IMG/VR virus record: IMGVR_UViG_3300032116_000004 | Coordinates: 186,001 to 250,000 of that record | Direction: 5' to 3' (one strand) | Length of the DNA: 64,000 bases | Shown here: positions 27,673 through 47,442 of the stretch, in pieces | Layout: each line of letters starts with the position of its first letter | Numbering within the stretch: position 1 is the stretch's first letter | Notes under the pieces: generated by a model | Told to the model about the DNA's origin: nothing | Database searches by the model: none | What the model saw: only the letters and a program-made list of their open reading frames with translations | Position numbers and translations under genes: made by a program

Positions 27673-27687
27673 TACAAAGAATACAGC

Positions 27688-29200: not shown

Positions 29201-29341
29201 TGGTTATTGATTTTTCCTATGATCAATATAAAAAAATATTCAGAAAAAACCTATAAAAACCATTGATCTAATAGCTATATACTGCTACAATTTTATATCA
29301 GTAGAAACACTGAGTCTCACAAAACTTCACAGGAGAAACAC

Positions 29342-30390: not shown

Positions 30391-30430
30391 ATGTTACCAT
30401 GGCGGAGTTTAGTCTTTAAATACTCCGCCC

Positions 30431-32511: not shown

Positions 32512-32656
32512 AAATGGCAGCGCCGGTCAGGTGATCGACGCCGGTTACAACGACGCCTAGGGTAGCAAACCCTTTTACCAGCATGATATGCCTGGAACGC
32601 CGAACCGTAGCGAGCAATCGCAAGCACATTTAAACTACCAAATTTGGATATAAAAA

Positions 32657-33616
32657 ATGAGCAAAACTACTAAGATTCGTTGGGTTATAGCCCATGAGCC
32701 TTTGAACCTTTTCCTTCGTGCCGCTGAAGATTTTGAGCGTCGTGTAAACGAACAACAAAGCGAGCACAAGATCGAAGTGGAAATCATGACCTTGACAGAA
32801 TACAGCCAGCGTTACAACGATGGTGTCGTCATCACCAAGCACGATCTCTTGGATCTCATGGAACAGGGCAAAATTGAAATGAGCCAGATGTATACCACAT
32901 GGCTCGCAGAACGCTATGAGCAAGACTTCTTGGCATTCGATCTACCATTCCTGTTCCGGGATCACGAGCATGCTACTCGCGTGTTCGAGAGCGAGATCGG
33001 CGAAGGTCTGTTACAGAAACTCACAGACAAGTCAAACGTGCGTGGCCTTTGCTACACATATTCCGGTGGTTTCCGCCAGATGATCGCTAACAAGAAAGTT
33101 TCTACTCTAGAAGAACTTGCTGGCACACCTGTGCGTTCAAACCGTAATCCTGTGGCACAAGCAACTATCGCTGCCTTGGGCATGAAGCCTGTTGTGGCCG
33201 AAGTTGAAGATCTGCGTCGTGTTGTTGTAGAAGGTCAAGCCGAAGGTGGCGAAACCAACTATCCTCGCATGTATCCTCTGCGCCACAATGAAGTCACCAA
33301 GTCAGTGATCGACACTGGTCACAGCTTGTTCTTGACATCGATGATCATTGGTGATCAGTTCTGGTCATCATTGAGCCCAGAAGTGCAGGCCGTGATCAAG
33401 ACTGCCGCTATCCTGGCCGGACGTGAAGAGCGTGCTGAAACCATCCGTGATGGTGCTCGTGCCGAGAAGCGTCTAGTGGAAGAAGAAGGCGCCAACATCG
33501 TCAAGTGGACACAAGAGCAACGTGAAGCCGCCAAGGTTGCACTGAGTGGTGTTTACGATCAGTTCCGTGATTCATTCACACCTGGTCTCATTGAGGCGAT
33601 TGAAAAGAAGGCTTGA
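32657..33616 (+). CDS. dctP: TRAP transporter substrate-binding protein (DctP-like)
   Basis: FDLPFLFRD, GGFR, EGGET; no evident signal peptide. Confidence 0.8.
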   Translation: MSKTTKIRWVIAHEPLNLFLRAAEDFERRVNEQQSEHKIEVEIMTLTEYSQRYNDGVVITKHDLLDLMEQGKIEMSQMYTTWLAERYEQDFLAFDLPFLFRDHEHATRVFESEIGEGLLQKLTDKSNVRGLCYTYSGGFRQMIANKKVSTLEELAGTPVRSNRNPVAQATIAALGMKPVVAEVEDLRRVVVEGQAEGGETNYPRMYPLRHNEVTKSVIDTGHSLFLTSMIIGDQFWSSLSPEVQAVIKTAAILAGREERAETIRDGARAEKRLVEEEGANIVKWTQEQREAAKVALSGVYDQFRDSFTPGLIEAIEKKA

Positions 33617-34409: not shown

Positions 34410-34484
34410 GGTCTCATAGTATAATGGTTAGTATAGCGGCTTGTCACGCCGTTGATAGGAGTTCGATTCTCCTTGGGACCGCCA
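34410..34484 (+). tRNA. tRNA-Asp(GTC)
   Basis: Cloverleaf, CCA. Confidence 0.92.
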
Positions 34485-34490
34485 AACAAT

Positions 34491-34565
34491 TCCAAGGTAG
34501 CACAGCGGTAGTGCAGAAGACTGTTACTCTTTTGGTCGCAGGTTCGATCCCTGCCCTTGTAGCCA
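34491..34565 (+). tRNA. tRNA-Asn(GTT)
   Basis: Cloverleaf, one acceptor mismatch, CCA. Confidence 0.88.
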
Positions 34566-34571
34566 TGATCT

Positions 34572-34661
34572 CCCCCGCTAGCTCATGGAGAGCAGGTCGG
34601 CTTATAACCGATTAATCTAGATAAGGTCCAGGATGAGGTTCGATTCCTCAGCGGGGGACCA
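34572..34661 (+). tRNA. tRNA with TAT anticodon and long variable region
   Basis: CTTATAA loop, short D-loop, CCA. Confidence 0.8.
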
Positions 34662-34670
34662 AAAAAATAT

Positions 34671-34747
34671 TACGGCGTAGTTCCAACTGGCAGAACGACA
34701 GTCTCCAAAACTGTATGATGGGGGTTCGAATCCCTCCGCCGTAGCCA
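34671..34747 (+). tRNA. tRNA-Trp(CCA)
   Basis: Cloverleaf, CCA. Confidence 0.9.
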
Positions 34748-34754
34748 ACACAAT

Positions 34755-34832
34755 GTGAAGGTGGCAGAGAGGTCCAATGCAAGAGTCTGCAAAACTCTAA
34801 AACCGTCGGTTCGAATCCGACCCTTCACTCCA
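34755..34832 (+). tRNA. tRNA-Cys(GCA)
   Basis: Cloverleaf, U73, CCA. Confidence 0.92.
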
Positions 34833-35210
34833 TTAGAATTCTAGTCGTAGGCCTATGCTGAGATTGTTTATAACCAAAGCGGATTCCATACCAGTGACCA
34901 CTTTGAGATACAGAGTGCGGTTACGGCCTTGGAAATAATCTGCCGCAAAATAGTTGGCTACCATCCAAGTCACGAAATGCAGATCCACTGCTTGCGTGGT
35001 AGGATGCCGGCCCAACAACGGATTACGTTCATAGTAGCCTTCAGCATATCTGCGAGTCATGTTGCGTGTGGTCGCCCAATCACCCAGAATGGCCGCGTTG
35101 GATGCCAAGAACCAATTTTGTTGCTCTGTGGTCCAGTTAGACCAGGCCCAGCTAGCACTGGGCAACCATAGCAGGATGGCCAAGAGTTTTTTCACAACAA
35201 TATTTAACAA
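34833..35210 (-). CDS. Secreted/membrane hypothetical protein within the tRNA array
   Basis: Signal peptide KKLLAILLWLPSASWA, C-terminal Phe. Confidence 0.65.
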   Translation of the reverse strand: MLNIVVKKLLAILLWLPSASWAWSNWTTEQQNWFLASNAAILGDWATTRNMTRRYAEGYYERNPLLGRHPTTQAVDLHFVTWMVANYFAADYFQGRNRTLYLKVVTGMESALVINNLSIGLRLEF

Positions 35211-35211
35211 T

Positions 35212-35301
35212 GGAAGCGTGGCAGAGTCTGGTTTATTGCACCGGTCTTGAAAACCGACGATCCGAAAAGGTCCGTGAGTTCGAATCTCACCGCTTCCGCC
35301 A
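35212..35301 (+). tRNA. tRNA-Ser(TGA)
   Basis: Long V-arm, G73, CCA. Confidence 0.93.
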
Positions 35302-35306
35302 AACCT

Positions 35307-35396
35307 GGAGAGGTCCCATAATGGTATTGGAGCGGATTGCTAATCCGTCGGTCGGCGTAATCCGGCTTCTGGGTTCAAGTCCCAGTCTCTCCGCCA
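35307..35396 (+). tRNA. tRNA-Ser(GCT)
   Basis: Long V-arm, G73, CCA. Confidence 0.93.
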
Positions 35397-35399
35397 TAT

Positions 35400-35591
35400 C
35401 CCGTCCATAGCAAACGTGATTGCTGTCGCTTACTCAGCGTTACGAGTCGGGGGCGGAGAACCGTTAAGCAGAGTGCCCTTTTATTGGGAGTCCAAACCGC
35501 TGTGCTGAATCACAACAGCGAAGAAGTTAACAACGTGATGACAGAGTAGACAACTCAGGACGGGGCGATGTGGAAACGTGGCCGTCCACCA
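35400..35591 (+). ncRNA. Unassigned structured RNA ending in ACCA
   Basis: GGACGG can pair with CCGTCC at 35401 or 35582; ends ACCA. Confidence 0.4.
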
Positions 35592-35621
35592 AATATGTTT
35601 TTAGACAGGTGTGAATTCACT

Positions 35622-35696
35622 GGTGTGGGTAGTGTAATGGTAGCACACTTGATTGTGGATCAGGTAGTGCGGGTTCGAATTCCGTCCTTCACCCCA
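35622..35696 (+). tRNA. tRNA-His(GTG)
   Basis: G-1:C73, CCA. Confidence 0.9.
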
Positions 35697-35705
35697 AATG
35701 TGTGA

Positions 35706-36173
35706 TCAAGTGGGTGTTACTTGCCCGGTAACAGCATCCACATGCACAGGTCGGCGTGTGACAAATGCGAAATCATAGAAAGGATTGAAGCGATAGTCTA
35801 CTGTTTTGCGCAGTCTGCAGAATGTCCAGGTGTCGGTGATTCCGGCCTTGGCCATGGCCTGCTGTGCTTGGGCGCAACTCAGTTTGGGTGGATACACAAA
35901 CGCCGTGCATTCGGCCACTCGCGAATCATCAATCACAGGTGAGGTGGCATGTCCTGATGTATCAATGGTTATGGCATAGGGTTTTTGATCTTGAGAACCT
36001 TGCCAAACAGTATACATGGTTCCGCCTGCATTGGCTTCGGCGAGATAAAATTGCGATGCGCTCTGATAGAGATCCATGAGACTCTTGCCGCCCCATATTT
36101 GCTGATCGTATGTCAAGGGCGATAACACCCCCAGTCGTCTGAGATGTTTCTTTACAGCGGCTATGATTTTCAT
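35706..36173 (-). CDS. Hypothetical protein
   Basis: 155-aa ORF with SD, inserted in the array. Confidence 0.65.
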   Translation of the reverse strand: MKIIAAVKKHLRRLGVLSPLTYDQQIWGGKSLMDLYQSASQFYLAEANAGGTMYTVWQGSQDQKPYAITIDTSGHATSPVIDDSRVAECTAFVYPPKLSCAQAQQAMAKAGITDTWTFCRLRKTVDYRFNPFYDFAFVTRRPVHVDAVTGQVTPT

Positions 36174-36213
36174 GGTTAATCCCCTTTATTCGAGTATTTA
36201 TAGGTGTTTTTTT

Positions 36214-36290
36214 GCCCCGGTGACGGAATTGGTATACGTGTTGGTCTTAGAAACCAAATTTTAGGAGTTCGAGTCTCCTCTGGGGCACCA
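36214..36290 (+). tRNA. tRNA-Leu(TAG), short variable region
   Basis: Cloverleaf, A73, CCA. Confidence 0.9.
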
Positions 36291-36303
36291 AATTTATTAG
36301 TAT

Positions 36304-36380
36304 GCGGTAGTGACGGAATCGGCATACGTATCGGACTTAAAATCCGAGTTTTGTGGGTTCGAGTCCCACCTTCCGCACCA
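36304..36380 (+). tRNA. tRNA-Leu(TAA), short variable region
   Basis: Cloverleaf, A73, CCA. Confidence 0.9.
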
Positions 36381-36385
36381 TACAA

Positions 36386-36464
36386 CGGAGTGTAGGCTAG
36401 TCTGGTCCAAGTCGCCTGCTTTGGGAGCAGGAAACCGCAGGTTCGAATCCTGCCACTCCGACCA
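36386..36464 (+). tRNA. tRNA-Pro(TGG)
   Basis: CGGAGTG acceptor, CCA. Confidence 0.93.
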
Positions 36465-36465
36465 A

Positions 36466-37659
36466 TCACAAAGGATGTCTTAATAGATCTTTTAAACAAC
36501 GATTTGATTCATCTAGCGTGAGTCTTTTTAATTTGTCATGAAATCGCTGTTTGGCAAAATCCAGGTTAGCATCAAACCTTTGTTGATTTTGATTCCAGAG
36601 TCTGACAGTATCAACAGGATTTGTGAGCAAGTGCTTGTTATTACTCACGGCGGTATACAATCTATCTATAGGGTTATCTATGATGTCATACGAATGATCA
36701 ATGATGTCGTCAAACATATCAAATCCAAAACTACGATAAAGATCTACGGTTCCTCGACTAGATATCATGATAGGAAAATTCCGAGCATATATCGTGTGGA
36801 TAAATTTTTCATCGATGTTAATAGTTGGCTCGCAGAAAAGTCTATTTGAAACCAATTCTACAAAACTTGTTCTATACAAAGGACGCAGATTGTTTCCAAA
36901 ATTGTTCACGTTATCAAAGTCTAGCACTGTGTCAGATCCAGCCTCTGTCAAATAGATGTCGTTGCCATTATCATCACCAAATCGTAAATTATCAGGATTT
37001 GATATCATCTTGTCAAACCCTTGGCACATGATCTGTTTTACATGATCATTGTGATCATGATATTGCCAAGGGTTGTGATCAAGGAAATCCCTGCTAGGCA
37101 ATTTATCTAATTGTTTGTATAAATGACCAGTGCTGATATGGCAGCAATTATCTAGATCTAATCCATACAAAAGGCTACAGAGAGCCAATCGATGAGTGCG
37201 CATTTGTCTATTCAGTGCGATGCCTATTTTTTTAGATTGTTGATTCTTGTCGTTGATTGGGGATAATTTTGCATATAGATCATCTTCAGGAACGGTAAAC
37301 CATTTGCCTACTCTTACATTGGGCAGATTGAAATATCCATCATGATAATGATTACCTTGTAACATAAAGACAATGGTTTTTTCAGGAGATGCGAGCGCCA
37401 GGTTCCTGATGTCTTGGAAAATAGTGGGTTCTTGGCCTTCAGTCCAATAATCATACTCCTGTGGGAAATTGCCGTAATGAGGACTGTCTTCCAAAATCAA
37501 AAACAACAGGTTTTCGTTGAGATCAAGGTTTAACCATTGATTCCAAGATGTTATATGCGTAAAAACACTGTCGTGCGGCACAGAAATGGCATCAGTCACT
37601 GTGTCAAATAATTTTCGTGCCATGGGCAATCTGTGTGGCACATGAGTAAAATATTTCAT
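36466..37659 (-). CDS. 'TEK-motif' putative glycosyltransferase
   Basis: FVELVS..INIDEKF..NFP..GFDMFDDIIDHSYD; ATG 37659 chosen to avoid tRNA overlap. Confidence 0.6.
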   Translation of the reverse strand: MKYFTHVPHRLPMARKLFDTVTDAISVPHDSVFTHITSWNQWLNLDLNENLLFLILEDSPHYGNFPQEYDYWTEGQEPTIFQDIRNLALASPEKTIVFMLQGNHYHDGYFNLPNVRVGKWFTVPEDDLYAKLSPINDKNQQSKKIGIALNRQMRTHRLALCSLLYGLDLDNCCHISTGHLYKQLDKLPSRDFLDHNPWQYHDHNDHVKQIMCQGFDKMISNPDNLRFGDDNGNDIYLTEAGSDTVLDFDNVNNFGNNLRPLYRTSFVELVSNRLFCEPTINIDEKFIHTIYARNFPIMISSRGTVDLYRSFGFDMFDDIIDHSYDIIDNPIDRLYTAVSNNKHLLTNPVDTVRLWNQNQQRFDANLDFAKQRFHDKLKRLTLDESNRCLKDLLRHPL

Positions 37660-37681
37660 ATACAAATTTATGTAAACCCAT

Positions 37682-37759
37682 GCCCCCTTGGACAAATAGG
37701 TAAAGTCGTCTCTCTCAAAAGGAGAAGTTCTCTCGGTTCGAATCCGAGAGGGGGTACCA
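37682..37759 (+). tRNA. tRNA-Leu(CAA), short variable region
   Basis: CTCAAAA loop, A73, CCA. Confidence 0.85.
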
Positions 37760-37765
37760 AACAAT

Positions 37766-37841
37766 GCAGGTATAATTCAGCTGGAAGAATGTCACGTTGC
37801 CAACGTGGATGTCGTCGGTTCGAACCCGACTACCTGCTCCA
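37766..37841 (+). tRNA. tRNA-Gly(GCC)
   Basis: Cloverleaf, U73, CCA. Confidence 0.92.
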
Positions 37842-37915
37842 GAATTATGTCCCAGGCCTCCGACTATTGGCCACTCGTTGATGCGCAGTGGTTGCGTCTG
37901 TGTTTTCTTTTTCTT

Positions 37916-37990
37916 GCATCGTTAGTTTAATGGTAAAACGCCCTCCTTACAAGTGGGATAGCGGTGGTTCGATTCCATCACGATGCACCA
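37916..37990 (+). tRNA. tRNA-Val(TAC)
   Basis: Cloverleaf, CCA. Confidence 0.88.
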
Positions 37991-37992
37991 AT

Positions 37993-38068
37993 GCCGCTTT
38001 AGCTGATGTGGTCATAGCACCGGTTTGAAGCACCGAGGAACCTGGTTCGATCCCAGGGGGCGGCACCA
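37993..38068 (+). tRNA. tRNA-Phe(GAA)
   Basis: TTGAAGC loop, CCA. Confidence 0.88.
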
Positions 38069-38074
38069 CTCTGT

Positions 38075-38148
38075 TGGGGGTTAGTTAAATGGTATAACCA
38101 CGGATTTTGATTCCGTTATTATAGGTTCGATTCCTATACCCTCTGCCA
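38075..38148 (+). tRNA. tRNA-Gln(TTG)
   Basis: Cloverleaf, CCA. Confidence 0.88.
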
Positions 38149-38154
38149 ATCATC

Positions 38155-38230
38155 GGGACGTTAGCTCATTAGGTAGAGCAGTAGACTTTTAATCTATTGG
38201 TGGTGGGTTCGAATCCCGCACGTCCTACCA
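38155..38230 (+). tRNA. tRNA-Lys(TTT)
   Basis: Cloverleaf, CCA. Confidence 0.93.
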
Positions 38231-38234
38231 ATAT

Positions 38235-38309
38235 GGTAATGTAGCATAACGGTAGTGCTCCACCTTCATACGGTGTTCAGTGTAAGTTCGACTCTTACCA
38301 TTACCACCA
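38235..38309 (+). tRNA. tRNA-Met(CAT), elongator
   Basis: TTCATAC loop, G1-C72, CCA. Confidence 0.85.
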
Positions 38310-38314
38310 AATAT

Positions 38315-38390
38315 CCGGCCGTGGTCTAATGGATAAGGCAACGCTCTTCTAAAGCGTCCGATGTGGGTTCGATTCCTGCCGGCCGGGCCA
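38315..38390 (+). tRNA. tRNA-Arg(TCT)
   Basis: Cloverleaf, CCA. Confidence 0.92.
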
Positions 38391-38392
38391 AA

Positions 38393-38468
38393 CGGTCCTT
38401 AACTCAATGGATAGAGTGCCAGTCTTCGAAACTGGAGGTTGGGAGTTCGAGTCTCTCAGGACCGGCCA
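38393..38468 (+). tRNA. tRNA-Arg(TCG)
   Basis: Cloverleaf, CCA. Confidence 0.92.
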
Positions 38469-38470
38469 AT

Positions 38471-38544
38471 GCTCGGGTAGTTAAATGGTATAACGGCCGA
38501 CCGATAATCGGCTATTCCTGGTTCGATCCCAGGTCTGAGCACCA
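38471..38544 (+). tRNA. tRNA-Ile(GAT)
   Basis: CCGATAA loop (C33), CCA. Confidence 0.88.
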
Positions 38545-38635
38545 ATTTTGCCAAATCAGTCAACGCTGAACACTGCTGTGACGTTATATAAGTGTAGGAC
38601 ATAATTCCTACAGTTTCTAACCAAAGGAGAACTTT

Positions 38636-38845
38636 ATGAAACTCGTAACCACACTCGTAGCAAGTTTGTTTGCAGTATCCGCTTTCGCACAAGCACCTGC
38701 CAAGAAAGAAGAAAAGAAAGAAGCAGCCAAGCCTGCCGCAGCCGCTCCTGCACCTGCCGCCAGTAAGCCTGCCGACAAAAAGGCTGAGCCTGCCAAAAGC
38801 GACGCTAAAAAAGACGATAAAAAAGCCGAAGCCGCTAAGAAGTAA
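38636..38845 (+). CDS. Small secreted Lys/Ala-rich protein (Asr-like)
   Basis: Signal peptide ...SAFAQ then KKEEKK/PA repeats; AAGGAG SD. Confidence 0.7.
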   Translation: MKLVTTLVASLFAVSAFAQAPAKKEEKKEAAKPAAAAPAPAASKPADKKAEPAKSDAKKDDKKAEAAKK

Positions 38846-39071
38846 TCCAACCAGGTATATCCTGGTCCATGTAGAGGGCAACGAAGATGGGTATTCCATC
38901 GACGATGAAAACATCTATGTAGGCTACAGGAGACCTGAAGTGGTAAAAGATCTCAAAGATACTGTCGCTGATGACGAGGATCTTTCGGATTATATAAAAA
39001 CCCGTTTGTTTTTAGCCCGACAGTTGGCCTTGATGAAAGCAATGGGATATGATTTAAGGACCCGAGTCTGA
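38670..39071 (+). CDS. Hypothetical protein (start uncertain, probably 3' of 38845)
   Basis: Open frame ending YIKTRLFLARQLALMKA. Confidence 0.35.
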   Translation: MQYPLSHKHLPRKKKRKKQPSLPQPLLHLPPVSLPTKRLSLPKATLKKTIKKPKPLRSNPTRYILVHVEGNEDGYSIDDENIYVGYRRPEVVKDLKDTVADDEDLSDYIKTRLFLARQLALMKAMGYDLRTRV

Positions 39072-39086
39072 CTCGGGTTCTTTTTT
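39057..39086 (+). terminator. Intrinsic terminator immediately before tRNA-Ala
   Basis: AGGACCCGAGT-CTG-ACTCGGGTTCT-TTTTT. Confidence 0.75.
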
Positions 39087-39160
39087 GGGGGATTAGTTAA
39101 ATGGGATAACATCGGCTTTGCAAGCCGAGATTGAGAGTTCGATTCTCTCATTCTCCACCA
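39087..39160 (+). tRNA. tRNA-Ala(TGC)
   Basis: G3:U70, CCA. Confidence 0.92.
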
Positions 39161-39169
39161 TCCAACTCG

Positions 39170-39199
39170 TTGACAGTCACTAAATATTTTTGTTATAAT
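39170..39199 (+). promoter_or_regulatory. sigma70-type promoter
   Basis: TTGACA-18-TATAAT with TG. Confidence 0.75.
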
Positions 39200-39220
39200 C
39201 AAGTAACCAAGGAGACTGCG

Positions 39221-39382
39221 ATGGAACAGAAAAAACAACCAGTGCCAGAATATTTCTTCAGTGCCGGTGAATGGGACAGACTGGGTTGTGGTCCTTTGCC
39301 ACCAGAGCGCAACAAGGATCGTCTGCAGATTCCGGAAAAGAGCGTGCAAAACAAAGATGACGCTGGCCTTGGCTACGATTGA
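39221..39382 (+). CDS. Small hypothetical protein (53 aa)
   Basis: AAGGAG SD. Confidence 0.55.
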   Translation: MEQKKQPVPEYFFSAGEWDRLGCGPLPPERNKDRLQIPEKSVQNKDDAGLGYD

Positions 39383-39620
39383 TGTGATCATGGCCAACAT
39401 GGTTTTTGCTGTTGCTGTGATGTGGCTACTGATTGAAGATTTTCGCACAGAAATGCGGAATTTGTCGGCTAAGTAATTTTACTATGCAGGAGTATGCACC
39501 CAAGGGCTCTTGAAAAATCTCTTGGAATTGTTGATGTGGTGAGAGGCCACAGGTCACGCGAGGACCGTACATGTCCTGATAGTCTCGTGAAAGAATTGTT
39601 GTATGAAGCAAAGAGAAAAG

Positions 39621-39855
39621 TGTTCAAGACATGGGTTCGAATCCCATCACCTCCACCTAAGTGTATAAGGTATATTTAGGTGGGGGTGCTCCGGTAATCG
39701 ATTGAGCAAAGAGTAAATGAGTGGACAACACGATAGGCGATGATCGTTAATCAAGCAAACTTTATAACTGCAAACGATGAGTTATACGCTCTAGCCGCCT
39801 GATAGGCACTAGATGAGGATTTTCCGGTTGTGCCTTATAACCCAAACAACCGGTT
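39621..39855 (+). ncRNA. ssrA: Circularly permuted (two-piece) tmRNA
   Basis: T-arm plus CACCTCC-ACC (39631-39657) precede the 5' strand GGGGGTG (39682-39688) with G3:U70; tag ANDELYALAA* at 39770-39802 after ATAACT; outer ends approximate. Confidence 0.9.
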
Positions 39856-39882
39856 GACTCTTTTTTATTTTCCTGTTATAAT
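39854..39882 (+). promoter_or_regulatory. sigma70-type promoter
   Basis: TTGACT-17-TATAAT with TG. Confidence 0.85.
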
Positions 39883-39889
39883 TAACAAT

Positions 39890-39901
39890 CGTTCTTTAAC
39901 A
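39890..39901 (+). promoter_or_regulatory. rrn-type boxA antitermination site
   Basis: CGTTCTTTAACA versus rrn TGCTCTTTAACA, just after the start site. Confidence 0.65.
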
Positions 39902-39916
39902 ATTCACAGCATCAAT

Positions 39917-39991
39917 GCTCGGTTCGTCTATCGGTTAGGACACCGCCCTTTCACGGCGGGAAGAGGGGTTCGATTCCCCTACCGAGTACCA
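39917..39991 (+). tRNA. tRNA-Glu(TTC)
   Basis: Cloverleaf, CCA. Confidence 0.93.
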
Positions 39992-40520
39992 TAAGCAAAC
40001 ATATCGGCCCCAGTGTCATACCTAATAGGTCTGCGGCAACACTGGGTGAAATCCTGTCGCAGGGACAAAGGTATGTTTGCTTATGGTAAATGGTGTGAGC
40101 GAAAGAACGCCTCGCCAGCAATACCCTGACCATCGGGGGAGATAACCACCCTAAGCCGCTGTAACCGTAATAGGACGCACTCGTTGGCTACGAGATGAAC
40201 ACGCGAGAGGGGGACTGGGCACCAGGCTGATACCCTGGGCAAAATGTCTGGACCTTAAACACAAGATGGTGTCATTTATCATTTCAACATAGACAGACAG
40301 TGATGCATACTATATTCCTGGCGGTACTACAAGCCCGGGTCACTCACTGCTATGTTTAGCCATACTGGATCGATCCGAGTATACGGTAGTTTTCCAGTCA
40401 CTGGCAACCCCAATCGGTCTGGGCTACACTCTGTGCTCTGTATGATCTGACGGAACGTTGATCCTCTACATCACAGGTCACTGAGCATCAACACAGACTC
40501 CGCATAATCGTAAGCGGAAC
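39988..40520 (+). ncRNA. Large unassigned structured RNA region
   Basis: 18-bp closing stem 39988-40005/40070-40087 and many hairpins; no + strand ORF of 60 aa or more. Confidence 0.5.
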
Positions 40521-40527
40521 TAACAAT

Positions 40528-40602
40528 CGCGGAGTATATCAGTGGCAGATGGCGAGTCTCATAAGCTCGAGGTCAGTGGTTCGAATCCACTCTCCGCAAC
40601 CA
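40528..40602 (+). tRNA. tRNA-fMet(CAT)
   Basis: C1:A72 mismatch, CCA; anticodon stem lacks the 3 G-C pairs. Confidence 0.85.
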
Positions 40603-40608
40603 AATAAA

Positions 40609-40686
40609 GCGGGTAGATCGTGGCAAGGGGCGCCCAGCAGTCTTCCAAACTGATCATGCGGAGTTCGACTCTCCCTACCCGCTCCA
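40609..40686 (+). tRNA. tRNA-Gly(TCC)
   Basis: CTTCCAA loop, U73, CCA; unusual D-arm. Confidence 0.82.
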
Positions 40687-40930
40687 GGACGTTCCGTGTA
40701 GCAACGGATAGTGCGACCCGCACGATGAGAAGTGGTGTAGCAACCACGGGTGGTCCCAGTCTAACCTAACTGGCGCTGGCAATGCGACAATCCCGAGGGT
40801 GGCGAGCGGGTGCCTACCAGCCCAAGTAGTCCTGCTGAGGGACTGGAAGCCGATGGGCCAAAGGTGGTAACACGAATCCAACCAGGACGCTGGCAGGCAA
40901 CAAAAAGACCGCGGCTCTCGGGCAAGCACT
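40687..40930 (+). ncRNA. Unassigned GC-rich structured RNA before rpoZ
   Basis: Two hairpins with identical GTAGCA loops (40693-40708, 40732-40747). Confidence 0.45.
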
Positions 40931-40952
40931 TTCTAAACACAAGGAGAATGTC

Positions 40953-41180
40953 ATGGCAAGAATCACATCAGAAAAAGCAGTAGAAGCCGTAGGTAATCGT
41001 TATGATCTAGTGTTGATCGCTAGTCGCCGAGCACGTGAGTTATCCAACGGCCATGCTCCTCACATCACGACCGACGATACTACCACAGTCAAGGCCATCC
41101 GCGAGATTGAACAAGGTCATGTGGGCAGAGATTACCTAAATAAAAACCCAGAAATAAACAAGAAAAAATCCAAATCTTGA
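40953..41180 (+). CDS. rpoZ: RNA polymerase omega subunit
   Basis: MARIT...NRYDLVLIASRRAREL...AIREIEQG. Confidence 0.92.
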   Translation: MARITSEKAVEAVGNRYDLVLIASRRARELSNGHAPHITTDDTTTVKAIREIEQGHVGRDYLNKNPEINKKKSKS

Positions 41181-41211
41181 TTTTTATTGCAAAGAGATAT
41201 ATACACATATT

Positions 41212-41646
41212 ATGCTATCATTCATACGCGAACTCACTGATCCACTGTTAGATTATCTCAAGGACGATCCAGTGCGTCCCGAGATCTCACGCGAATTCCG
41301 TGTGAGTGGTCAGCGTTTCGTGTCAGCCCTGGTAGACGATCAACCACGTGCCATGGTCTGCGTGAGCCTGCATGATTTTGTGCCTGAGACTGTGGCGGAT
41401 CTGTCGCAGGACCCTGCGGAACCCAACACAGCGATATTTTATACTATCTGGAGTTATGCTCCTGGAGCGGCCACAGAACTGTTGTTTGCCACAGTGGATC
41501 AAATCCGAGAACTTTATCCCACTGTGCGACGATTCGTCACACTGAGTCCCAAGACAGAAATGGCTCGCAAATTCCATCTACGCAACGGGGCACATGTGCT
41601 GAGAGAAAACACAGACACTGTCAACTACGAATATATAATTGCATGA
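41212..41646 (+). CDS. GNAT-like protein resembling malonyl-CoA decarboxylase C-domain
   Basis: AIFYTIWS...RFVTLSP. Confidence 0.45.
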   Translation: MLSFIRELTDPLLDYLKDDPVRPEISREFRVSGQRFVSALVDDQPRAMVCVSLHDFVPETVADLSQDPAEPNTAIFYTIWSYAPGAATELLFATVDQIRELYPTVRRFVTLSPKTEMARKFHLRNGAHVLRENTDTVNYEYIIA

Positions 41647-41810
41647 CCAAATTCACTGACACTCTACGGGCCGCGCTAGAGAAAAAACATGCCGCGGCAC
41701 ATCCTGACACCAAGTCGGATGCCAAAGATGATGGCAAAAGCAAACCTAAAAGGACACCGCCGGTGATCACGGGTAAACCAGTAAAGAAAGTCACTGGACG
41801 TGGACGCTAG
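41643..41810 (+). CDS. Small basic protein (55 aa)
   Basis: ATGA-coupled, MTKFTDTLRAALEKK... Confidence 0.55.
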   Translation: MTKFTDTLRAALEKKHAAAHPDTKSDAKDDGKSKPKRTPPVITGKPVKKVTGRGR

Positions 41811-41912
41811 TATTTGGAACTTGCCTTGGTGGCAACTGGGTTGGGGACTGGCAGTGGTAGCCAACTACATTTATTGGATCTTTGTTGATCCTGTGTTGCA
41901 TACAGAACGCAG

Positions 41913-41941
41913 TTGACCAAAAACTGCTTTTCTAGTATAAT
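41913..41941 (+). promoter_or_regulatory. sigma70-type promoter, leaderless
   Basis: TTGACC-17-TATAAT, ATG 6 nt downstream. Confidence 0.8.
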
Positions 41942-41947
41942 GCTAGA

Positions 41948-42313
41948 ATGGACTTTTACATAGATGAAGCATATCTCACTGATGTTGTAGTGCGGACTGA
42001 ATATCCTCGCTACAACGATCGCACAGAGCTGACTGCAGAAGAACTTATCTCGGTAATAAAACATCCTGCGCCTGCTGTTAGTATTGGCACCAAAGATCAT
42101 CCTGAGTTTGCTTGCCTACGTGAGCAGTTAGAACAAGATGGATATATTCAAGTTCAACGTGGTTGGTGGAACGGTGATCGTGTGTTAAAGCCATTCCAGT
42201 TAAACGATGTAAAATTTAAAAAAGGTGATCAGTTTCCCTGTGCCGCGGCCATGAACGGTCATTTAAAGTTTCGAAAACTATATAAACAAAAGAAAGGAGG
42301 GCACAATGCCTAG
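41948..42313 (+). CDS. Hypothetical protein
   Basis: Leaderless ORF. Confidence 0.65.
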   Translation: MDFYIDEAYLTDVVVRTEYPRYNDRTELTAEELISVIKHPAPAVSIGTKDHPEFACLREQLEQDGYIQVQRGWWNGDRVLKPFQLNDVKFKKGDQFPCAAAMNGHLKFRKLYKQKKGGHNA

Positions 42314-42896
42314 TGTATTTTTAGTATCAGACACGCACTTTGGTCACGCAGGTGTGTGCCGCTTCACACTCAACGACGGAGTAACCAAACTTCGTCCCTG
42401 GGATGATCCAGAGGAGATGGATGAGTTCATGATCAAGGCCTGGAACGAACGTGTCCGACCTACAGACAAAGTCTACCACTTGGGCGATGTTGTGATCAAC
42501 AGAAAAGCGTTGAAAACTCTTGCTCGTCTAAACGGTGACAAGGTCTTGATCCGCGGCAATCACGACATCTTCAGAGATGATGAGTATCGAGCATACTTCC
42601 GTGAGCTTCGTGCTTACCATGTGATGAATGGCATGATCTTGAGTCATATCCCTATCCATAGCGAAAGCCTGGGTCGGTTTGGTGTCAACATCCATGGTCA
42701 CTTGCATGCCAACCGGGTGATGAAAGCCATGCCGCCGGCATACAGGCCTGATATCATAGATCCACGTTATCATTGTGTGTGCGTGGAACAAACTGACTTT
42801 GCTCCTATCTTGTTCGAAGATGTGATCAAGCGCATCGAAGCAGAAGGTGGTACTATCGGTTTTCAAAACGGCAACGGCCCTCGAGGTGCAGATTGA
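42306..42896 (+). CDS. Calcineurin-like metallophosphoesterase
   Basis: SDTHFGH, LGD, GNHD, SH, HGHLH. Confidence 0.92.
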   Translation: MPSVFLVSDTHFGHAGVCRFTLNDGVTKLRPWDDPEEMDEFMIKAWNERVRPTDKVYHLGDVVINRKALKTLARLNGDKVLIRGNHDIFRDDEYRAYFRELRAYHVMNGMILSHIPIHSESLGRFGVNIHGHLHANRVMKAMPPAYRPDIIDPRYHCVCVEQTDFAPILFEDVIKRIEAEGGTIGFQNGNGPRGAD

Positions 42897-43063
42897 TGAC
42901 ATATCCAAGGATCAAATTCTGGGAAGCCACCATCCGCACCCCAGATGGTCAAGAGTTTAAAGACCGTGTGGGAGCAGATACGGCCGAACAGGCTCGTAGA
43001 CTTTTGCAAGAACGGCATGGCCCACGTGCAGTGCCTTACTTGCCGCGCATGATCCCCAGTTAG
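42896..43063 (+). CDS. Small hypothetical protein (55 aa)
   Basis: TGATG coupling, MTYPRIKFWEA... Confidence 0.55.
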   Translation: MTYPRIKFWEATIRTPDGQEFKDRVGADTAEQARRLLQERHGPRAVPYLPRMIPS

Positions 43064-43200
43064 GGCCACAGTCAGCCTTGCTCACTTGGCCAGCGCCAAT
43101 AAGTGCCGATAGCAAAATGACTGGGTGACGTCGGGTAATACCGCAAGAGCCGTAGATACCATAAGTCTGCGCCGGACTGGGTAACCGGCATACATATTTC

Positions 43201-44388
43201 ATGCCAAAAATCATTTCCATAGAACCTGCCATTGATCCTAATGCCAGACCTACATTCTTACTAGATTGGGAATTGACCATGAAGTGCAATCTAGACTGTA
43301 GTTACTGTCCTACTCCAGATCAGGTTCCTGTATCTATGGCCTATCATGACAATTCAGCTGATCATCCATCGTTGGAAAAATGTCTATCGACTATAGATTT
43401 CATGTATGAATATGTGGATCTTTACATGCAACAAAAACCACGATGGAATAGGTCTGTGGTGCTCAATATCTACGGTGGAGAGAGTTTGTTTCATCCAGAC
43501 ATAGAAAAGATCATGGCTGCGGTCAGAGACAAACATAAGCCTTATCGAGACAGTTGGCCATTGACTGTGACTTGCACAACCAATGGCGTCGTTGGTCCAA
43601 ATCTCATGAAGAGAGTGGTAGGCTTTGTAGATGAATTCACAGTGAGTTATCATGCGGAATCATTGTCCAAACAAAAACAACAAGTGCTAGACAATCTTCG
43701 TTTGATAAAAAATAGTGGCCGTCGTCTCAAGTGTGTTGTGCTCATGCACGGCGATGAAAAATTTTGGCCAGAATTGCAAGAAGTCATTGCTTTCTGCCAA
43801 CAAGAGAATATTCGATATCTTCCCCGGCATTTGGATGGTCATGTCAATGCCAATTATGGCCCCAAACAAATACAATGGTTCCAAAATTTATGGAATCAAC
43901 GCAGTCCTGGCCATGCCGCGATCAAACAGCGAGAAATTATTGAACACAAACAACAAACACTGACGAGCAATGTAGATCTATCTGATGTGGGCAGGGCCTG
44001 TTGCGGCGGCAGATTGATGTGTGTCAATCAAGAAATGAAAGATCCGATATTTTACATTCCTGACAATAACTTCCTGGGCTGGAAATGCAGTGTGAATTGG
44101 TATTTTTTGTATGTTAAACAACACACCGATGAAGTTTATCTCAACAAAGACTGTCGCATGAATTTTGACGGGTCTGTATCACCAATCGGTTATCTCAATA
44201 ATACCACGGAAATTTTAGATTGGCTCAAAACTAGATTCCATGGATCCAACCTTCCCGTCATCACCTGTGCCAAAAATCTTTGCACATGTGGTCTGTGCGC
44301 ACCAAAAAGCCAATCCGAATCTAACTTTCGTGAGATAATGCGTAAACATGTAGCCGATATCAATGTTTTTGATGTTGACACAGCGTGA
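43201..44388 (+). CDS. Radical SAM protein
   Basis: CNLDCSYC, GGE, TTNG, Cys-rich C-terminus. Confidence 0.9.
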   Translation: MPKIISIEPAIDPNARPTFLLDWELTMKCNLDCSYCPTPDQVPVSMAYHDNSADHPSLEKCLSTIDFMYEYVDLYMQQKPRWNRSVVLNIYGGESLFHPDIEKIMAAVRDKHKPYRDSWPLTVTCTTNGVVGPNLMKRVVGFVDEFTVSYHAESLSKQKQQVLDNLRLIKNSGRRLKCVVLMHGDEKFWPELQEVIAFCQQENIRYLPRHLDGHVNANYGPKQIQWFQNLWNQRSPGHAAIKQREIIEHKQQTLTSNVDLSDVGRACCGGRLMCVNQEMKDPIFYIPDNNFLGWKCSVNWYFLYVKQHTDEVYLNKDCRMNFDGSVSPIGYLNNTTEILDWLKTRFHGSNLPVITCAKNLCTCGLCAPKSQSESNFREIMRKHVADINVFDVDTA

Positions 44389-44411
44389 TGATTATCGTAA
44401 AATAACATTCT

Positions 44412-44485
44412 GCCCTGTTAGTTAAATGGTATAACAGTTGATTTGTAATCATCAATTGGCAGTTCGATTCTGTCACGGGGCACCA
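44412..44485 (+). tRNA. tRNA-Thr(TGT)
   Basis: Cloverleaf, CCA. Confidence 0.9.
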
Positions 44486-45343: not shown

Positions 45344-46483
45344 ATGAAAAAAACAGCGATTGCAGGTATCCTGGCAGCGACTCTAGCGGGTGCCGTGCAT
45401 GCTCAGAGTAATGTCACAGTCTACGGTGTATTGGACACAGGTGTAGTCAGTGCAAGTAACTCCGGCACGGCCAATGGTCAGTTCACAGGCGTAGTAAGTG
45501 GTATCCACGGAGCCAGCCATATTGGTTTTAGAAGCACTGAAAAAATTGATAACAAATTGACAGTAGGTGTCAAAATTGAATCCGACATCAACGTGGCAAA
45601 CGGAACACAAGGACTAGCATCAGGATCTGGTTCAGCTAACGCTGTGTTTGCTCGTGGATCCAATGTGTTCTTGCAACACACTGACCTTGGCACAGTGACG
45701 ATCGGTCGACAAGACAATGCGGCCTGGAGCACATATTCCAGCCTAGACTCGCGTCGCCACAGCAACTTTGGTGGTAATCCTGTGTTCCTGTCGGATGGTT
45801 CCAGTTTCGGCGGTACGGCCACTTCCAAAACAGGACTGAGCAAATACACAGGTGGTCCATTTGTGAGCCAGGCAATTCGCTATGATACGCCAACGTTTGG
45901 TGGGTTCAGCGCGACCTATGCTCGTATGTTTGGTAACGTAGCTGGTGACATGGATGCCAGCGCAGCCGACCAAGTGGTCTTGCGCTACGACAACAAAGGC
46001 ATGGTGTTTGGTGCTGTGGGTTATTACAATACCAATGCCAGCACTGGTACAAGCCAAGGACGCAACAATTATGCAGGCGTAGGTATCCGTGCTACCAAAG
46101 ATCTCACTCTGTTGACCAACTACTGGAAGATGGAAGACCCCAACGGTGCCGGAGCCGCAAACACCAAATTTGATCTTTACAGCGTGGGTGCTCGTTATCA
46201 GATCAATCCTAAGTTGGAGGCCACTGTTGGTTTCTATCGCTTAGAGGACAAGATCAACAGCAACAATGGTGCTGATCGTCAGTCCGCTGGTCTAGCATAC
46301 TCACTCAGCAAGCGCACCACACTCATGGCCATGGCTTCTTATGCGCAAAACAAAGGAACCACTGGATTTGCAGCCTGGGGCGGCGGTGGATCTAATGCCA
46401 ATACTTTAGGCAACAGTTTTGGATTGAATGCCGCTGGAATTGATCAGAAGGCCTATGCTGTAGCGATCCGTCACAGCTTCTAA
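45344..46483 (+). CDS. Gram-negative general porin (Burkholderiales-type)
   Basis: AQSNVTVYGVLD, TIGRQ, YSLSKRT, terminal RHSF. Confidence 0.93.
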   Translation: MKKTAIAGILAATLAGAVHAQSNVTVYGVLDTGVVSASNSGTANGQFTGVVSGIHGASHIGFRSTEKIDNKLTVGVKIESDINVANGTQGLASGSGSANAVFARGSNVFLQHTDLGTVTIGRQDNAAWSTYSSLDSRRHSNFGGNPVFLSDGSSFGGTATSKTGLSKYTGGPFVSQAIRYDTPTFGGFSATYARMFGNVAGDMDASAADQVVLRYDNKGMVFGAVGYYNTNASTGTSQGRNNYAGVGIRATKDLTLLTNYWKMEDPNGAGAANTKFDLYSVGARYQINPKLEATVGFYRLEDKINSNNGADRQSAGLAYSLSKRTTLMAMASYAQNKGTTGFAAWGGGGSNANTLGNSFGLNAAGIDQKAYAVAIRHSF

Positions 46484-46503
46484 AAACAAAAAGGAATACA
46501 ATC

Positions 46504-47442
46504 ATGAAGAAAATCGTTACTTCTGCGATGATGTCATTCCTTTTCGCTATCTCTGGGCCGTCGCTGGCTCAGTCGATAGTGGGAGGGTTTGGTAGCACGA
46601 CTACAGAATACAAAATCATCACCAACAATCCAGTGGGGGCCGGTGCTGATGTGTTGGCACGCAAAATCAGCCAGATCATGCAAGAACGTCATAACATCAA
46701 CAGCAAGGTCTACAATATCACCACAGGCGGCGGTTTAGCATCCGCTCAAGAATTTAAGAAGGAACGACTTGCAGTCACTATCACCAGCGCCAGTGCATTG
46801 GCTTATCTACCTATACAACTAGGCAATGTAGGTTATACCCGTGCAGATTTTAACGTGATCAACGAGATTGGGATCGGCGGGGTCATTTGGTTTTCTTCTG
46901 CTGACAGCGGGATCAATGATCTCGATGATCTTGTCAAAGTTTTACCTACCTTGCCCAAGTCATCGGTTTCTGTTGGTGCTGCCGACGGTGGTTCGAACGC
47001 CCAGGCATTCTTGAAAACCAAGAATCTAAAAGTTCCTGTGGTCACTTTCCGTTCAAACTCAGATGCTGTGTTACAGGTGGCCGGTGGTCATGTGCCGGTT
47101 GGCGTGGTTACTTTGACCACTGAGCAGATTTGGACTTTTGCGGCAGAGAAAAAGATCAAGATCCTTGGAGTCACAAGCAAAAAGACCCTGGAACATCGTG
47201 GACATAAGATCCCATCAATCAATGAGAAATTTGGAGTTCCTATCCTACCGGGCGGTGCTTTCTTGGCCATGACCCCGGGCGACACAGTCGAGCATCGTGC
47301 TCTCAAAGTCGCTTTGTTGGAGGCTCTCAAAGATCCAGAAATCGAAGCCATAAAGAAAAAATACTGGCCCATGGGTAACTACATCACGCTGGATGAAATC
47401 ATTCAAGTGGCACAGAAAAATCAAGATCTTATCAAGAAATGA
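46504..47442 (+). CDS. Divergent Bug/TctC periplasmic binding protein
   Basis: Signal peptide, GAGADVLAR, QVAGGHV, KILGVT. Confidence 0.8.
   Translation: MKKIVTSAMMSFLFAISGPSLAQSIVGGFGSTTTEYKIITNNPVGAGADVLARKISQIMQERHNINSKVYNITTGGGLASAQEFKKERLAVTITSASALAYLPIQLGNVGYTRADFNVINEIGIGGVIWFSSADSGINDLDDLVKVLPTLPKSSVSVGAADGGSNAQAFLKTKNLKVPVVTFRSNSDAVLQVAGGHVPVGVVTLTTEQIWTFAAEKKIKILGVTSKKTLEHRGHKIPSINEKFGVPILPGGAFLAMTPGDTVEHRALKVALLEALKDPEIEAIKKKYWPMGNYITLDEIIQVAQKNQDLIKK

What the first reader, a model, noticed from the sequence alone, without database searches (positions are those of the whole stretch)
39988..40520. About 530 nt of dense unassigned RNA structure between tRNA-Glu and tRNA-fMet
Seen: an 18-bp stem (39988-40005/40070-40087) includes the tRNA-Glu ACCA end and closes a multibranch junction. 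About 430 nt follow with many hairpins (e.g. CCAGG/CCTGG, TCCGC/GCGGA) and a long-range TGACCATC/GATGGTGTCA pairing. There is no convincing ORF. Established: large ncRNAs such as GOLLD and ROOL occur in phage tRNA clusters. No RNase P or group I core motifs were recognised. Inference: a large phage ncRNA, possibly a new class.
Basis: partly seen in the sequence, partly recalled or inferred. Interest (0 to 1): 0.62.

Follow-up and report, generated by a model that had tools for sequence, protein, structure and literature searches.

The report
New large phage RNA among tRNAs
The stretch between tRNA-Glu and the initiator-like tRNA-Met of this uncultured freshwater jumbo phage encodes a real, conserved, heavily base-paired RNA of about 420-620 nt that matches no catalogued RNA family and turns up in lake RNA libraries; what it does is still unknown.

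Summary
Window 39992-40527 lies in the tRNA/tmRNA array of a 316-kb IMG/VR jumbo phage.

Structure:
- D1 (39987-40088) is an 18-21 bp stem that starts inside the ACCA end of tRNA-Glu. Its interior is hypervariable.
- D2a (40089-40276) is closed by a covarying helix and contains an H-type pseudoknot.
- D2b (40277-40527) is 81-98% identical between lineages.

Distribution: I found 12 lineages, all in lake or freshwater metagenomic phage contigs, always between tRNA-Glu(UUC) and tRNA-Met(CAU). All seven lineages checked share the sigma-70 promoter.

Covariation: in the 440-nt body, 38 of 120 predicted pairs covary and 95% of cells are canonical. Slid controls give 5-15 covarying pairs and 33-39% canonical cells.

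Other tests:
- No conserved ORF and no codon periodicity.
- Rfam 15 gives nothing at E<=10, so GOLLD, ROOL, RNase P, introns and YrlA are not matched.
- Exact-match contigs from RNA libraries of three studies cover 40124-40476, and a fourth bridges into tRNA-Met. Flanking non-tRNA DNA is uncovered.
- Natural variants lack D1 plus one hairpin (L112), or the whole body (L110).

Verdict: a new family of large structured ncRNA, released from a tRNA precursor. It resembles GOLLD and ROOL in context only. Function is inferred, not shown.

The parts
39854..39882 (+). Sigma-70-type promoter (TTGACT, 17 nt, TATAAT, with TG before the -10) that heads the unit tRNA-Glu / large RNA / tRNA-Met / tRNA-Gly
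   Evidence: Matches 11 of 12 consensus positions. GGTTGAC and TATAA are invariant in 7 lineages, even where the sequence further upstream is unrelated.
39917..39991 (+). tRNA-Glu(UUC) with encoded CCA; its last 5 nt form the start of the D1 stem
   Evidence: ARAGORN; Rfam tRNA 56.1 bits.
39987..40088 (+). D1: long closing stem (39987-40005 with 40070-40088) around a 64-nt interior. A variable module and a likely processing stem.
   Evidence: MFE z = -5.9. The stem is kept in all homologs that have D1, with 8 of 9 distal pairs covarying. The interior is of four unrelated types and is absent in L112. No RNA-library contig lies on 39998-40104.
40089..40276 (+). D2a: 5' body domain. It is closed by helix 40089-94/40271-76. 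It contains an H-type pseudoknot (40124-27/40136-39 plus 40129-34/40265-70) and hairpins 40180-84/40190-94 and 40222-26/40234-38.
   Evidence: Covarying pairs per helix: 6/6, 2/4, 4/6, 5/5 and 3/5. Identity between lineages is 52-96%. RNA-library contigs cover 40124-40289.
40277..40498 (+). D2b: near-invariant 3' core. It holds helix P-a (40289-92/40350-53 and 40298-306/40339-49). Hairpin P-b (40359-62/40402-05 and 40364-69/40393-98) is dispensable in L112. An invariant strand lies at 40412-40426. P-c spans 40428-35/40472-78 and 40444-50/40457-63. A second invariant strand lies at 40483-40498.
   Evidence: D2b (40277-40527, including the P-d hairpin listed next) is 81-98% identical between lineages, and 185 of 269 columns are invariant. 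Covariation is seen in P-b (5 pairs), P-c (5 pairs) and the P-a base. RNA-library contigs cover 40262-40476.
40499..40527 (+). P-d hairpin (40499-506/40511-18) and a 9-nt linker to tRNA-Met. The hairpin is retained even in the L110 deletion variant, so it may serve the downstream tRNA as a leader.
   Evidence: One compensatory pair, U-A to G-C in L112. The L110 remnant keeps it. An RNA contig at 40462-40600 bridges into the tRNA.
40528..40602 (+). tRNA-Met(CAU) with a C1-A72 mismatch (initiator-like). Its 5' end would define the 3' end of the large RNA after RNase P cleavage.
   Evidence: ARAGORN and Rfam. The sequence is identical in L004. RNase P cleavage is inferred from the general rule for tRNA 5' ends.
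40608..40683 (+). Non-canonical tRNA-Gly(UCC)-like gene, the last RNA of the unit
   Evidence: Only a sub-threshold Rfam tRNA-Sec match, 32.5 bits. Relatives have a canonical tRNA-Gly(tcc) at this place.

Best explanation
Window 39992-40527 encodes a previously uncatalogued family of large structured non-coding RNA, carried by a sub-clade of uncultured freshwater jumbo phages.

Supported by the data:
- It sits in one conserved unit: a consensus sigma-70 promoter, tRNA-Glu, the RNA, an initiator-like tRNA-Met, then tRNA-Gly.
- It folds into a variable long-stem module (D1), a pseudoknotted domain (D2a) and a near-invariant 3' core (D2b).
- It is present in environmental RNA libraries.

Inferred:
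- Host RNA polymerase transcribes the unit as one precursor.
- The RNA is cut out by the enzymes that mature the flanking tRNAs. RNase P at 40527/40528 would make its 3' end. 3' processing of tRNA-Glu would make the 5' side, probably helped by a double-strand-specific cut (host RNase III) in the 18-21 bp D1 stem.
- The freed ~440-nt body acts in trans as a stable RNA.
- Because D2b is conserved like a tRNA while phage proteins have diverged, it probably binds a conserved host component of translation or RNA metabolism.
- In this it would work like GOLLD and ROOL, the tRNA-island RNAs of other phages.
- It is accessory, not essential.
For: Synteny: 12 lineages carry it between tRNA-Glu(ttc) and tRNA-Met(cat).

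Covariation:
- Whole element: 31 of 118 RNAalifold pairs are compensatory.
- Body: 38 of 120 pairs covary and 95% of cells are canonical, against 5-15 covarying pairs and 33-39% canonical cells in slid controls.
- Both stems of the pseudoknot covary.

Conservation: D2b is 81-98% identical, while the window/L004 flanks are about 75% identical at DNA level and the radical SAM protein 64%.

Transcription unit: the promoter is invariant in 7 lineages.

Expression: RNA-library contigs with 0 mismatches lie at 40124-40288, 40139-40289, 40262-40423 and 40266-40476, from three studies. One contig at 40462-40600 (two mismatches, fourth study) bridges into tRNA-Met. None lies on 39249-39569 or 40854-41388.

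Not coding: no conserved ORF and no codon periodicity.

Not catalogued: no Rfam family at E<=10.

Dispensable parts: D1 and P-b are missing in L112, and the body plus tRNA-Met are missing in L110.

Context shared with GOLLD and ROOL: phage location, tRNA islands, a conserved 3' region with a variable 5' region (bioRxiv 10.1101/2024.12.08.627333, read).
Against: - No experiment shows a trans function, a binding partner or the RNA ends.
- Logan contigs cannot show strand, ends or abundance, and the depths are only about 2-3.5x.
- The family is narrow and its members are close, so much of D2b is invariant and says nothing about pairing.
- Several long-range pairs are uncertain and differ between predictions.
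- The phage encodes no RNase III, so the D1 cut would depend on the host.
- One lineage lost the RNA, so any function is conditional.
- One contig bridging into tRNA-Met is equally compatible with precursor RNA or with DNA.
Confidence: 0.6

Rival explanations
1. It is only a cis-acting spacer. On this reading it is a structured processing and insulation element that orders the maturation of tRNA-Glu and tRNA-Met. For example, it could hold the ACCA end of tRNA-Glu in a duplex until cleavage. It would have no life of its own after processing.
For: The D1 stem pairs with the tRNA-Glu ACCA in every lineage that has D1. The P-d hairpin stays next to the downstream tRNA even in the L110 deletion. 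No contig covers D1 in RNA libraries.
Against: A spacer does not need 250 nt kept at 81-98% identity or a covarying pseudoknot. L112 drops D1 but keeps the body. Most tRNAs of the same array are separated by 2-10 nt with no such element. The body itself is found in RNA libraries of three studies.
Confidence: 0.13
2. It is an anti-defence RNA. It would act as a decoy or sponge that protects phage or host tRNAs, or blocks a host RNA-guided or tRNA-targeting immune nuclease. The hypervariable D1 would track a fast-evolving host factor.
For: It lies inside a tRNA array. Its presence is accessory (L110 lost it; more distant relatives lack it). It has a strong consensus promoter. D1 has four unrelated interiors, one with a T-arm-like hairpin. 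tRNA tails and tRNAs are known immune targets (titles listed).
Against: No defence or anti-defence gene is linked to it. The most conserved part (D2b) is invariant rather than fast-evolving. The variability of D1 is equally explained if only its stem matters.
Confidence: 0.1
3. It is a ribozyme, for example a very divergent RNase P-like or other tRNA-processing catalyst. The invariant UGGU of D1 or D2 would dock tRNA ACCA ends.
For: Its size, pseudoknot and near-invariant core are typical of large ribozymes. It has tRNA neighbours and an ACCA/UGGU pairing.
Against: No RNase P, group I, group II or small-ribozyme model matches at E<=10 in four searches. The 5' and 3' ends do not pair as in RNase P. 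L112 lacks D1 with its UGGU strand.
Confidence: 0.05
4. It is a very divergent member of GOLLD or ROOL.
For: It shares their context and layout: phage location, a tRNA island, a conserved 3' region with a variable 5' region, and tRNA-like material in the variable part.
Against: Neither Rfam model gives any hit at E<=10 on the window RNA alone, on the L004 RNA alone, or on three further loci. Its size of 420-620 nt is below the >800 nt of GOLLD.
Confidence: 0.04
5. It is not a functional RNA. It would be decayed tRNA genes or the scar of a mobile element, or it would hide a small protein gene.
For: Other gaps in the same array are lineage-specific insertions. D1 of the L004 type carries a T-arm-like hairpin.
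Against: Compensatory changes maintain about 10 helices. D2b is more conserved than the coding flanks. No frame is conserved and there is no periodicity.
Confidence: 0.02

Closest known systems
[quoted passage not shown]
   Same: It is encoded by phages and prophages, often next to tRNAs, and one member lies downstream of a tRNA-Met. [quoted passage not shown] It was first seen in lake metagenomes, and its function is unknown.
   Different: There is no match to the Rfam model at E<=10. This RNA is 420-620 nt rather than >800 nt. The helices and sequence motifs are unrelated. Oligomerisation was not tested here.
ROOL RNA (Rumen-Originating, Ornate, Large)
   Same: It is a phage and prophage RNA near tRNA islands, of similar size as I recall it. 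It has multiple pseudoknots, no known protein partner and no known function.
   Different: There is no match to the Rfam model. The habitat and host range differ: here it is freshwater jumbo phages with a betaproteobacterial-type tmRNA.
tRNA-punctuated release of RNAs (mitochondrial punctuation model; MALAT1/mascRNA; the stable RNAs C and D of the T4 tRNA cluster). Recalled from established knowledge, not tested here.
   Same: A non-tRNA RNA lies directly between tRNA structures in one transcript, so the tRNA-processing enzymes would define its ends.
   Different: This is a resemblance of mechanism only. There is no sequence relation, and the processing sites were not mapped.
Bacterial Y RNA (YrlA) with Ro/Rsr
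   Same: D1 of the L004/L093 type has a long terminal stem plus a T-arm-like hairpin that abuts the 3' strand, as in the tRNA-like module of YrlA (the comparison is from memory).
   Different: The window's own D1 has no T-arm. There is no Rfam YrlA or Y RNA match. No TROVE/Ro gene is in the phage genome. D1 is dispensable.

Membership tests
GOLLD RNA | Match to the curated covariance model (sequence plus secondary structure) | tested here: not met
   No hit at E<=10 on window 39850-41600, on window 39992-40527 alone, on L004 6762-7358 alone, or on L093/L094/L097.
GOLLD RNA | Phage or prophage location near tRNAs, with a conserved 3' region and a variable 5' region | tested here: met
   It lies inside a 27-tRNA array. 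D2b is 81-98% identical, D2a 52-96%, and the D1 interior cannot be aligned. The feature is described.
GOLLD RNA | Length above about 800 nt | tested here: not met
   Members are 419-621 nt.
GOLLD / ROOL | RNA-only homo-oligomeric nanocage | not testable with these tools
   This needs native gels, SEC-MALS or cryo-EM. The one palindromic loop I examined (40367-40376) does not stay palindromic in L103, L104 or L094.
ROOL RNA | Match to the curated covariance model | tested here: not met
   No hit at E<=10.
RNase P RNA (bacterial A/B, archaeal, other Rfam models) | Match to a covariance model, including the conserved P4 core | tested here: not met
   No hit at E<=10. The 5' and 3' ends of the body are not paired to each other in the covariation-supported structure.
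Group I / group II introns and small self-cleaving ribozymes | Match to Rfam models | tested here: not met
   No hit at E<=10. No joints or back-joins were seen in RNA contigs over the region.
Y RNA / YrlA | Ro/Rsr (TROVE) partner gene and a match to the Y RNA models | tested here: not met
   PF05731 is absent from the 316-kb genome, with positive controls in 2 named genomes. No Rfam hit.
Retron / reverse-transcriptase-associated ncRNA | Adjacent or genome-encoded reverse transcriptase | tested here: not met
   PF00078 is absent from the genome.
Protein-coding gene | A conserved open frame and third-position bias of substitutions | tested here: not met
   The longest stop-free stretch changes strand, frame and place between homologs. 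Variable columns split 91/83/79 by codon phase.
Structured ncRNA (general) | Compensatory base changes beyond controls, plus presence as RNA | tested here: met
   38 of 120 pairs covary against 5-15 in slid controls. Exact-match contigs occur in RNA libraries of three studies, plus a bridging contig in a fourth.

The most novel reading that the evidence does not exclude
The RNA is a third, independent class of large 'ornate' phage RNA from tRNA islands, with its own fold. Its near-invariant 250-nt core would do something active. It might build an RNA-only assembly, as GOLLD and ROOL do. Or it might act as a new catalytic or tRNA-docking RNA on host translation components. The swappable D1 cassette, enclosed by a double-stranded stem, would deliver lineage-specific small RNAs, one type being tRNA-like.
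Probability: 0.12. Interest if true: 0.85.

Novelty: new variant of a known kind. Interest (0 to 1): 0.62.

Why it matters
Large, intricately folded bacterial and phage RNAs are rare. Those whose function is known are ribozymes or scaffolds of central machines. The two phage examples near tRNA islands (GOLLD, ROOL) turned out to form RNA-only cages, and their role is still unknown.

A third, unrelated RNA in the same genomic niche would suggest that tRNA islands are a general home for large functional RNAs in phages. This one has a clear domain structure, natural deletion variants, its own conserved promoter and environmental expression.

It also offers a compact object for structure work and for testing what such RNAs do during infection: about 420 nt in its minimal natural form.

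Its narrow distribution and the lack of a cultured host limit the immediate impact.

Tried and rejected
- Y RNA/YrlA idea, prompted by the T-arm-like hairpin in D1 of L004/L093: rejected. There is no TROVE gene and no Rfam hit. The window's own D1 lacks the T-arm, and L112 lacks D1.
- Retron or RT template idea, prompted by the long stem: no reverse transcriptase in the genome.
- Phage-encoded RNase III or SmpB as partners: neither is present.
- RNase P by eye (a G-rich strand and the CCAGG hairpin look vaguely like P4/P8): not supported by any model.
- Kissing-loop dimer through the palindrome at 40367-40376: the palindrome is not kept in L103, L104 or L094.
- A long-range closure of the whole body (40089-40100 with 40479-40491), predicted: it has no compensatory support, and L101, L104 and L112 change the 3' strand. 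The covarying partner is 40271-76.
- Homolog searches that found nothing:
  - INPHARED phages by blastn matched only the tRNAs.
  - Five more distant jumbo relatives were negative by BLAST and by covariance model R1.
  - Two invariant 20-mers over 185,579 species genomes gave 0 hits and one chance hit in Microvirga.
  - R1 found nothing in 151 sampled genomes of the phylum of that Microvirga genome. That search had no positive control genome, so it is weak.
- The radical SAM neighbour has no relative in cultured phages.
- A duplex-energy scan of the RNA against the phage's tRNAs and tmRNA timed out and was not repeated.
- Supplementary tables of the IMG/VR structured-RNA survey (PMC10690425) are not held. 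I could not check whether a fragment of this RNA is among its 8,495 candidates.
- The count of structure pairs was not used, because it needs a 650-character typed structure string. The same counts were made in scripts.

Full report
**Where it lies.** The window is bases 186001-250000 of a 315,778-bp IMG/VR virus record, estimated 91% complete. Bases 34410-44485 hold 27 tRNA genes and a permuted, betaproteobacterial-type tmRNA, all on the + strand. The finding is the 536 nt between tRNA-Glu(UUC) (39917-39991) and a tRNA-Met(CAU) with a C1-A72 mismatch (40528-40602). Nearby genes are auxiliary ones: TctA, TctC, DctP, a phosphate-binding-like protein, a porin, AhpC, an RNA polymerase omega-like protein, a phosphoesterase and a radical SAM protein. 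Runs that hold the DNA are mostly labelled freshwater or lake metagenomes, though several carry a fungus-metagenome label. No cultured phage is related. A betaproteobacterial host is my inference from the tmRNA type and the transporter genes.

**The observation.** The stem 39988-40005/40070-40087 exists. It extends to U39987-A40088 and encloses two hairpins. This 100-nt module folds with z = -5.9, and the whole region with z = -2.7. Six base pairs of that pairing (40129-34 with 40265-70) are kept through compensatory changes. No ORF is convincing in the window or in L004.

**Relatives.**
- A protein anchor (the radical SAM gene) found one diverged relative in viral contigs: L004, a 343-kb contig with 64% protein identity. 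It has a 597-nt element at the same place.
- A scan of metagenome contigs with a conserved 20-mer added L093/L095, L094, L096, L097 and L098.
- Viral-contig scans added L100 and the 3' fragment L101.
- The 144-aa downstream protein has thousands of relatives. Looking up the contigs of some of them added L103, L104/L105 and L112, and the deletion variant L110.
- In every case the order is tRNA-Glu(ttc), the element, tRNA-Met(cat), tRNA-Gly(tcc), usually just downstream of the tmRNA.
- Phages whose 144-aa protein is 71-77% identical (L106-L109) lack the element.
- Five further jumbo relatives are negative by BLAST and by a covariance model of the core. Their radical SAM proteins are about 50% identical, and three of them are at least 92% complete.
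- Bacterial genomes gave nothing real.

**Anatomy.** Alignments A3, A4 and A7 and a 12-sequence body alignment show three parts.

- *D1 (39987-40088).* This is an 18-21 bp stem whose first pairs use the last acceptor base, the discriminator and the CCA of tRNA-Glu. The first 8 bp are invariant, and 8 of the next 9 covary. What the stem encloses differs completely between lineages. There are four types, and the L004/L093 type has a T-arm-like hairpin abutting the 3' strand. L112 has no D1 at all.
- *D2a (40089-40276).* A helix in which 6 of 6 pairs covary (40089-94/40271-76) closes this domain. Inside, 40124-27/40136-39 and 40129-34/40265-70 form an H-type pseudoknot, and both stems covary. Hairpin 40180-84/40190-94 covaries at 5 of 5 pairs, and 40222-26/40234-38 at 3 of 5. 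Identity between lineages is 52-96%.
- *D2b (40277-40527).* This part is 81-98% identical, with 185 of 269 columns invariant. For comparison, window and L004 are about 75% identical over the flanking 4 kb. Its helices P-a, P-b, P-c and P-d each gain compensatory changes from the more diverged L104, L112 and L101. L112 lacks P-b.

**Covariation overall.**
- Whole element: 31 of 118 predicted pairs are compensatory, or 45 of 156 against 7-14 in slid controls.
- Body: 38 of 120 pairs covary and 95% of cells are canonical, against 5-15 covarying pairs and 33-39% canonical cells in slid controls.
- The sequences are related and few, so these numbers show a maintained structure rather than a formal probability.
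- Some long-range pairs remain uncertain.

**Not coding, not a known family.** The longest stop-free stretch changes strand, frame and place among homologs. Variable columns show no codon phase. Rfam 15 (4,227 models) gives only the flanking tRNAs and noise at E<=10. This held for the region with flanks, the RNA alone, the L004 RNA alone and three other loci. That excludes GOLLD, ROOL, RNase P, group I and II introns, 6S, Y RNA and T-box, as far as those models can see. The genome has no reverse transcriptase, Ro/TROVE, RNase III or SmpB gene.

**Expression.**
- A near-consensus sigma-70 promoter lies at 39854-39882, 35 nt upstream of tRNA-Glu (TTGACT, 17 nt, TATAAT, with TG before the -10). 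Its hexamers are invariant in seven lineages, including those where the upstream sequence is unrelated. The unit therefore travels with its own promoter.
- In Logan assemblies of four metatranscriptome studies, contigs without a single mismatch lie at 40124-40288, 40139-40289, 40262-40423 and 40266-40476.
- One contig with two mismatches at 40462-40600 runs into tRNA-Met.
- No contig lies on D1, on 39249-39569 or on 40854-41388.
- Contigs cannot give strand, ends or level, and the depths are low. Still, three independent libraries hit the same 350 nt and nothing else that is not tRNA-like. That argues for a stable RNA rather than contaminating DNA.

**How it most likely works.**

*Supported by the data:* a conserved promoter-to-tRNA-Gly unit, a maintained multi-domain fold, and presence in RNA libraries.

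*Inferred:*
- The unit is made as one precursor, and tRNA maturation frees the RNA. RNase P would cut at 40527/40528, and tRNA-Glu 3' processing would cut at about 39991.
- The D1 stem is long enough for a host double-strand-specific nuclease. That would explain why only its pairing is conserved, why its interior can be anything, and why D1 is missing from the RNA contigs.
- The P-d hairpin survives even in the L110 deletion, so it may serve the downstream tRNA.
- The body would then act in trans. tRNA-like conservation of D2b, beside diverging proteins, points to a conserved host partner in translation or RNA metabolism. This is a guess.
- The element is accessory: L110 lost the body together with tRNA-Met, and more distant relatives never show it.

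**Comparison and novelty.** The closest known things are GOLLD and ROOL: large phage RNAs near tRNA islands with unknown function. GOLLD also has a conserved 3' region, a variable 5' region and occasional tRNAs in its linker. The resemblance is one of niche and layout only, and the membership test by covariance model fails. I found no description of this RNA in the paper searches I ran. I could not check the candidate lists of the IMG/VR survey. I file it as a new family within the known kind 'large structured phage RNAs of tRNA islands'.

**Scores.**
- Real structured RNA of a new family: about 0.9.
- The processing model: about 0.5-0.6.
- A trans function on host translation or RNA machinery: about 0.3.
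- Interest: 0.62.

Noticed in passing
window 40608-40683: A tRNA-Gly(UCC)-like gene with an odd, enlarged D region. ARAGORN misses it and Rfam scores it only as a sub-threshold tRNA-Sec (32.5 bits). Relatives have a canonical tRNA-Gly(tcc) at this spot.
   Followed up: partly
window 40953-41180: A 75-aa ORF is an RNA polymerase omega subunit homolog (PF01192, E = 2e-14). It lies downstream of the tRNA/RNA unit and is conserved in relatives (L103, L104, L110-L112). The 269 nt before it (40684-40952) are unassigned.
   Followed up: partly
window 39170-39565: A perfect sigma-70 consensus promoter (TTGACA, 18 nt, TATAAT; 12/12) lies just after tRNA-Ala. About 365 nt with no assigned gene follow it before the tmRNA, and this stretch is about 73% conserved with L004. 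It could be a long tmRNA precursor leader or another RNA.
   Followed up: no
window 38636-38845: A 69-aa ORF with a signal-peptide-like start and a Lys/Ala/Pro-rich tail sits inside the tRNA array. Related sequences with 3-nt indels are abundant in one lake metatranscriptome (X17).
   Followed up: no
window 34833-35210, 35697-36213, 36465-37681: Three gaps in the tRNA array (378, 517 and 1217 nt) are absent from L004 and L098, which have their own insertions elsewhere. Minus-strand ORFs in them (125, 155 and 432 aa) have no Pfam match. They look like lineage-specific insertions.
   Followed up: partly
L110:2248-2404 and L112:1903-2321: These are natural variants of the element. L110 keeps only D1, the first bases of D2a and the P-d hairpin, and has lost tRNA-Met. 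L112 is a 419-nt minimal form without D1 and hairpin P-b.
   Followed up: yes
L104:5259-5636, L105:4391-4915, L110:3610-3717: Relatives carry release-factor-like genes or fragments (PF00472 RF-1, PF03462 PCRF) a few genes downstream of the RNA. The window has none at that place.
   Followed up: no
window 24644-33616 and 45344-47442: The phage carries a notable set of host-like transport genes: TctA, two TctC-like receptors, DctP, a phosphate-binding-like protein and a Gram-negative porin. It also has AhpC and a CMD-family protein.
   Followed up: no
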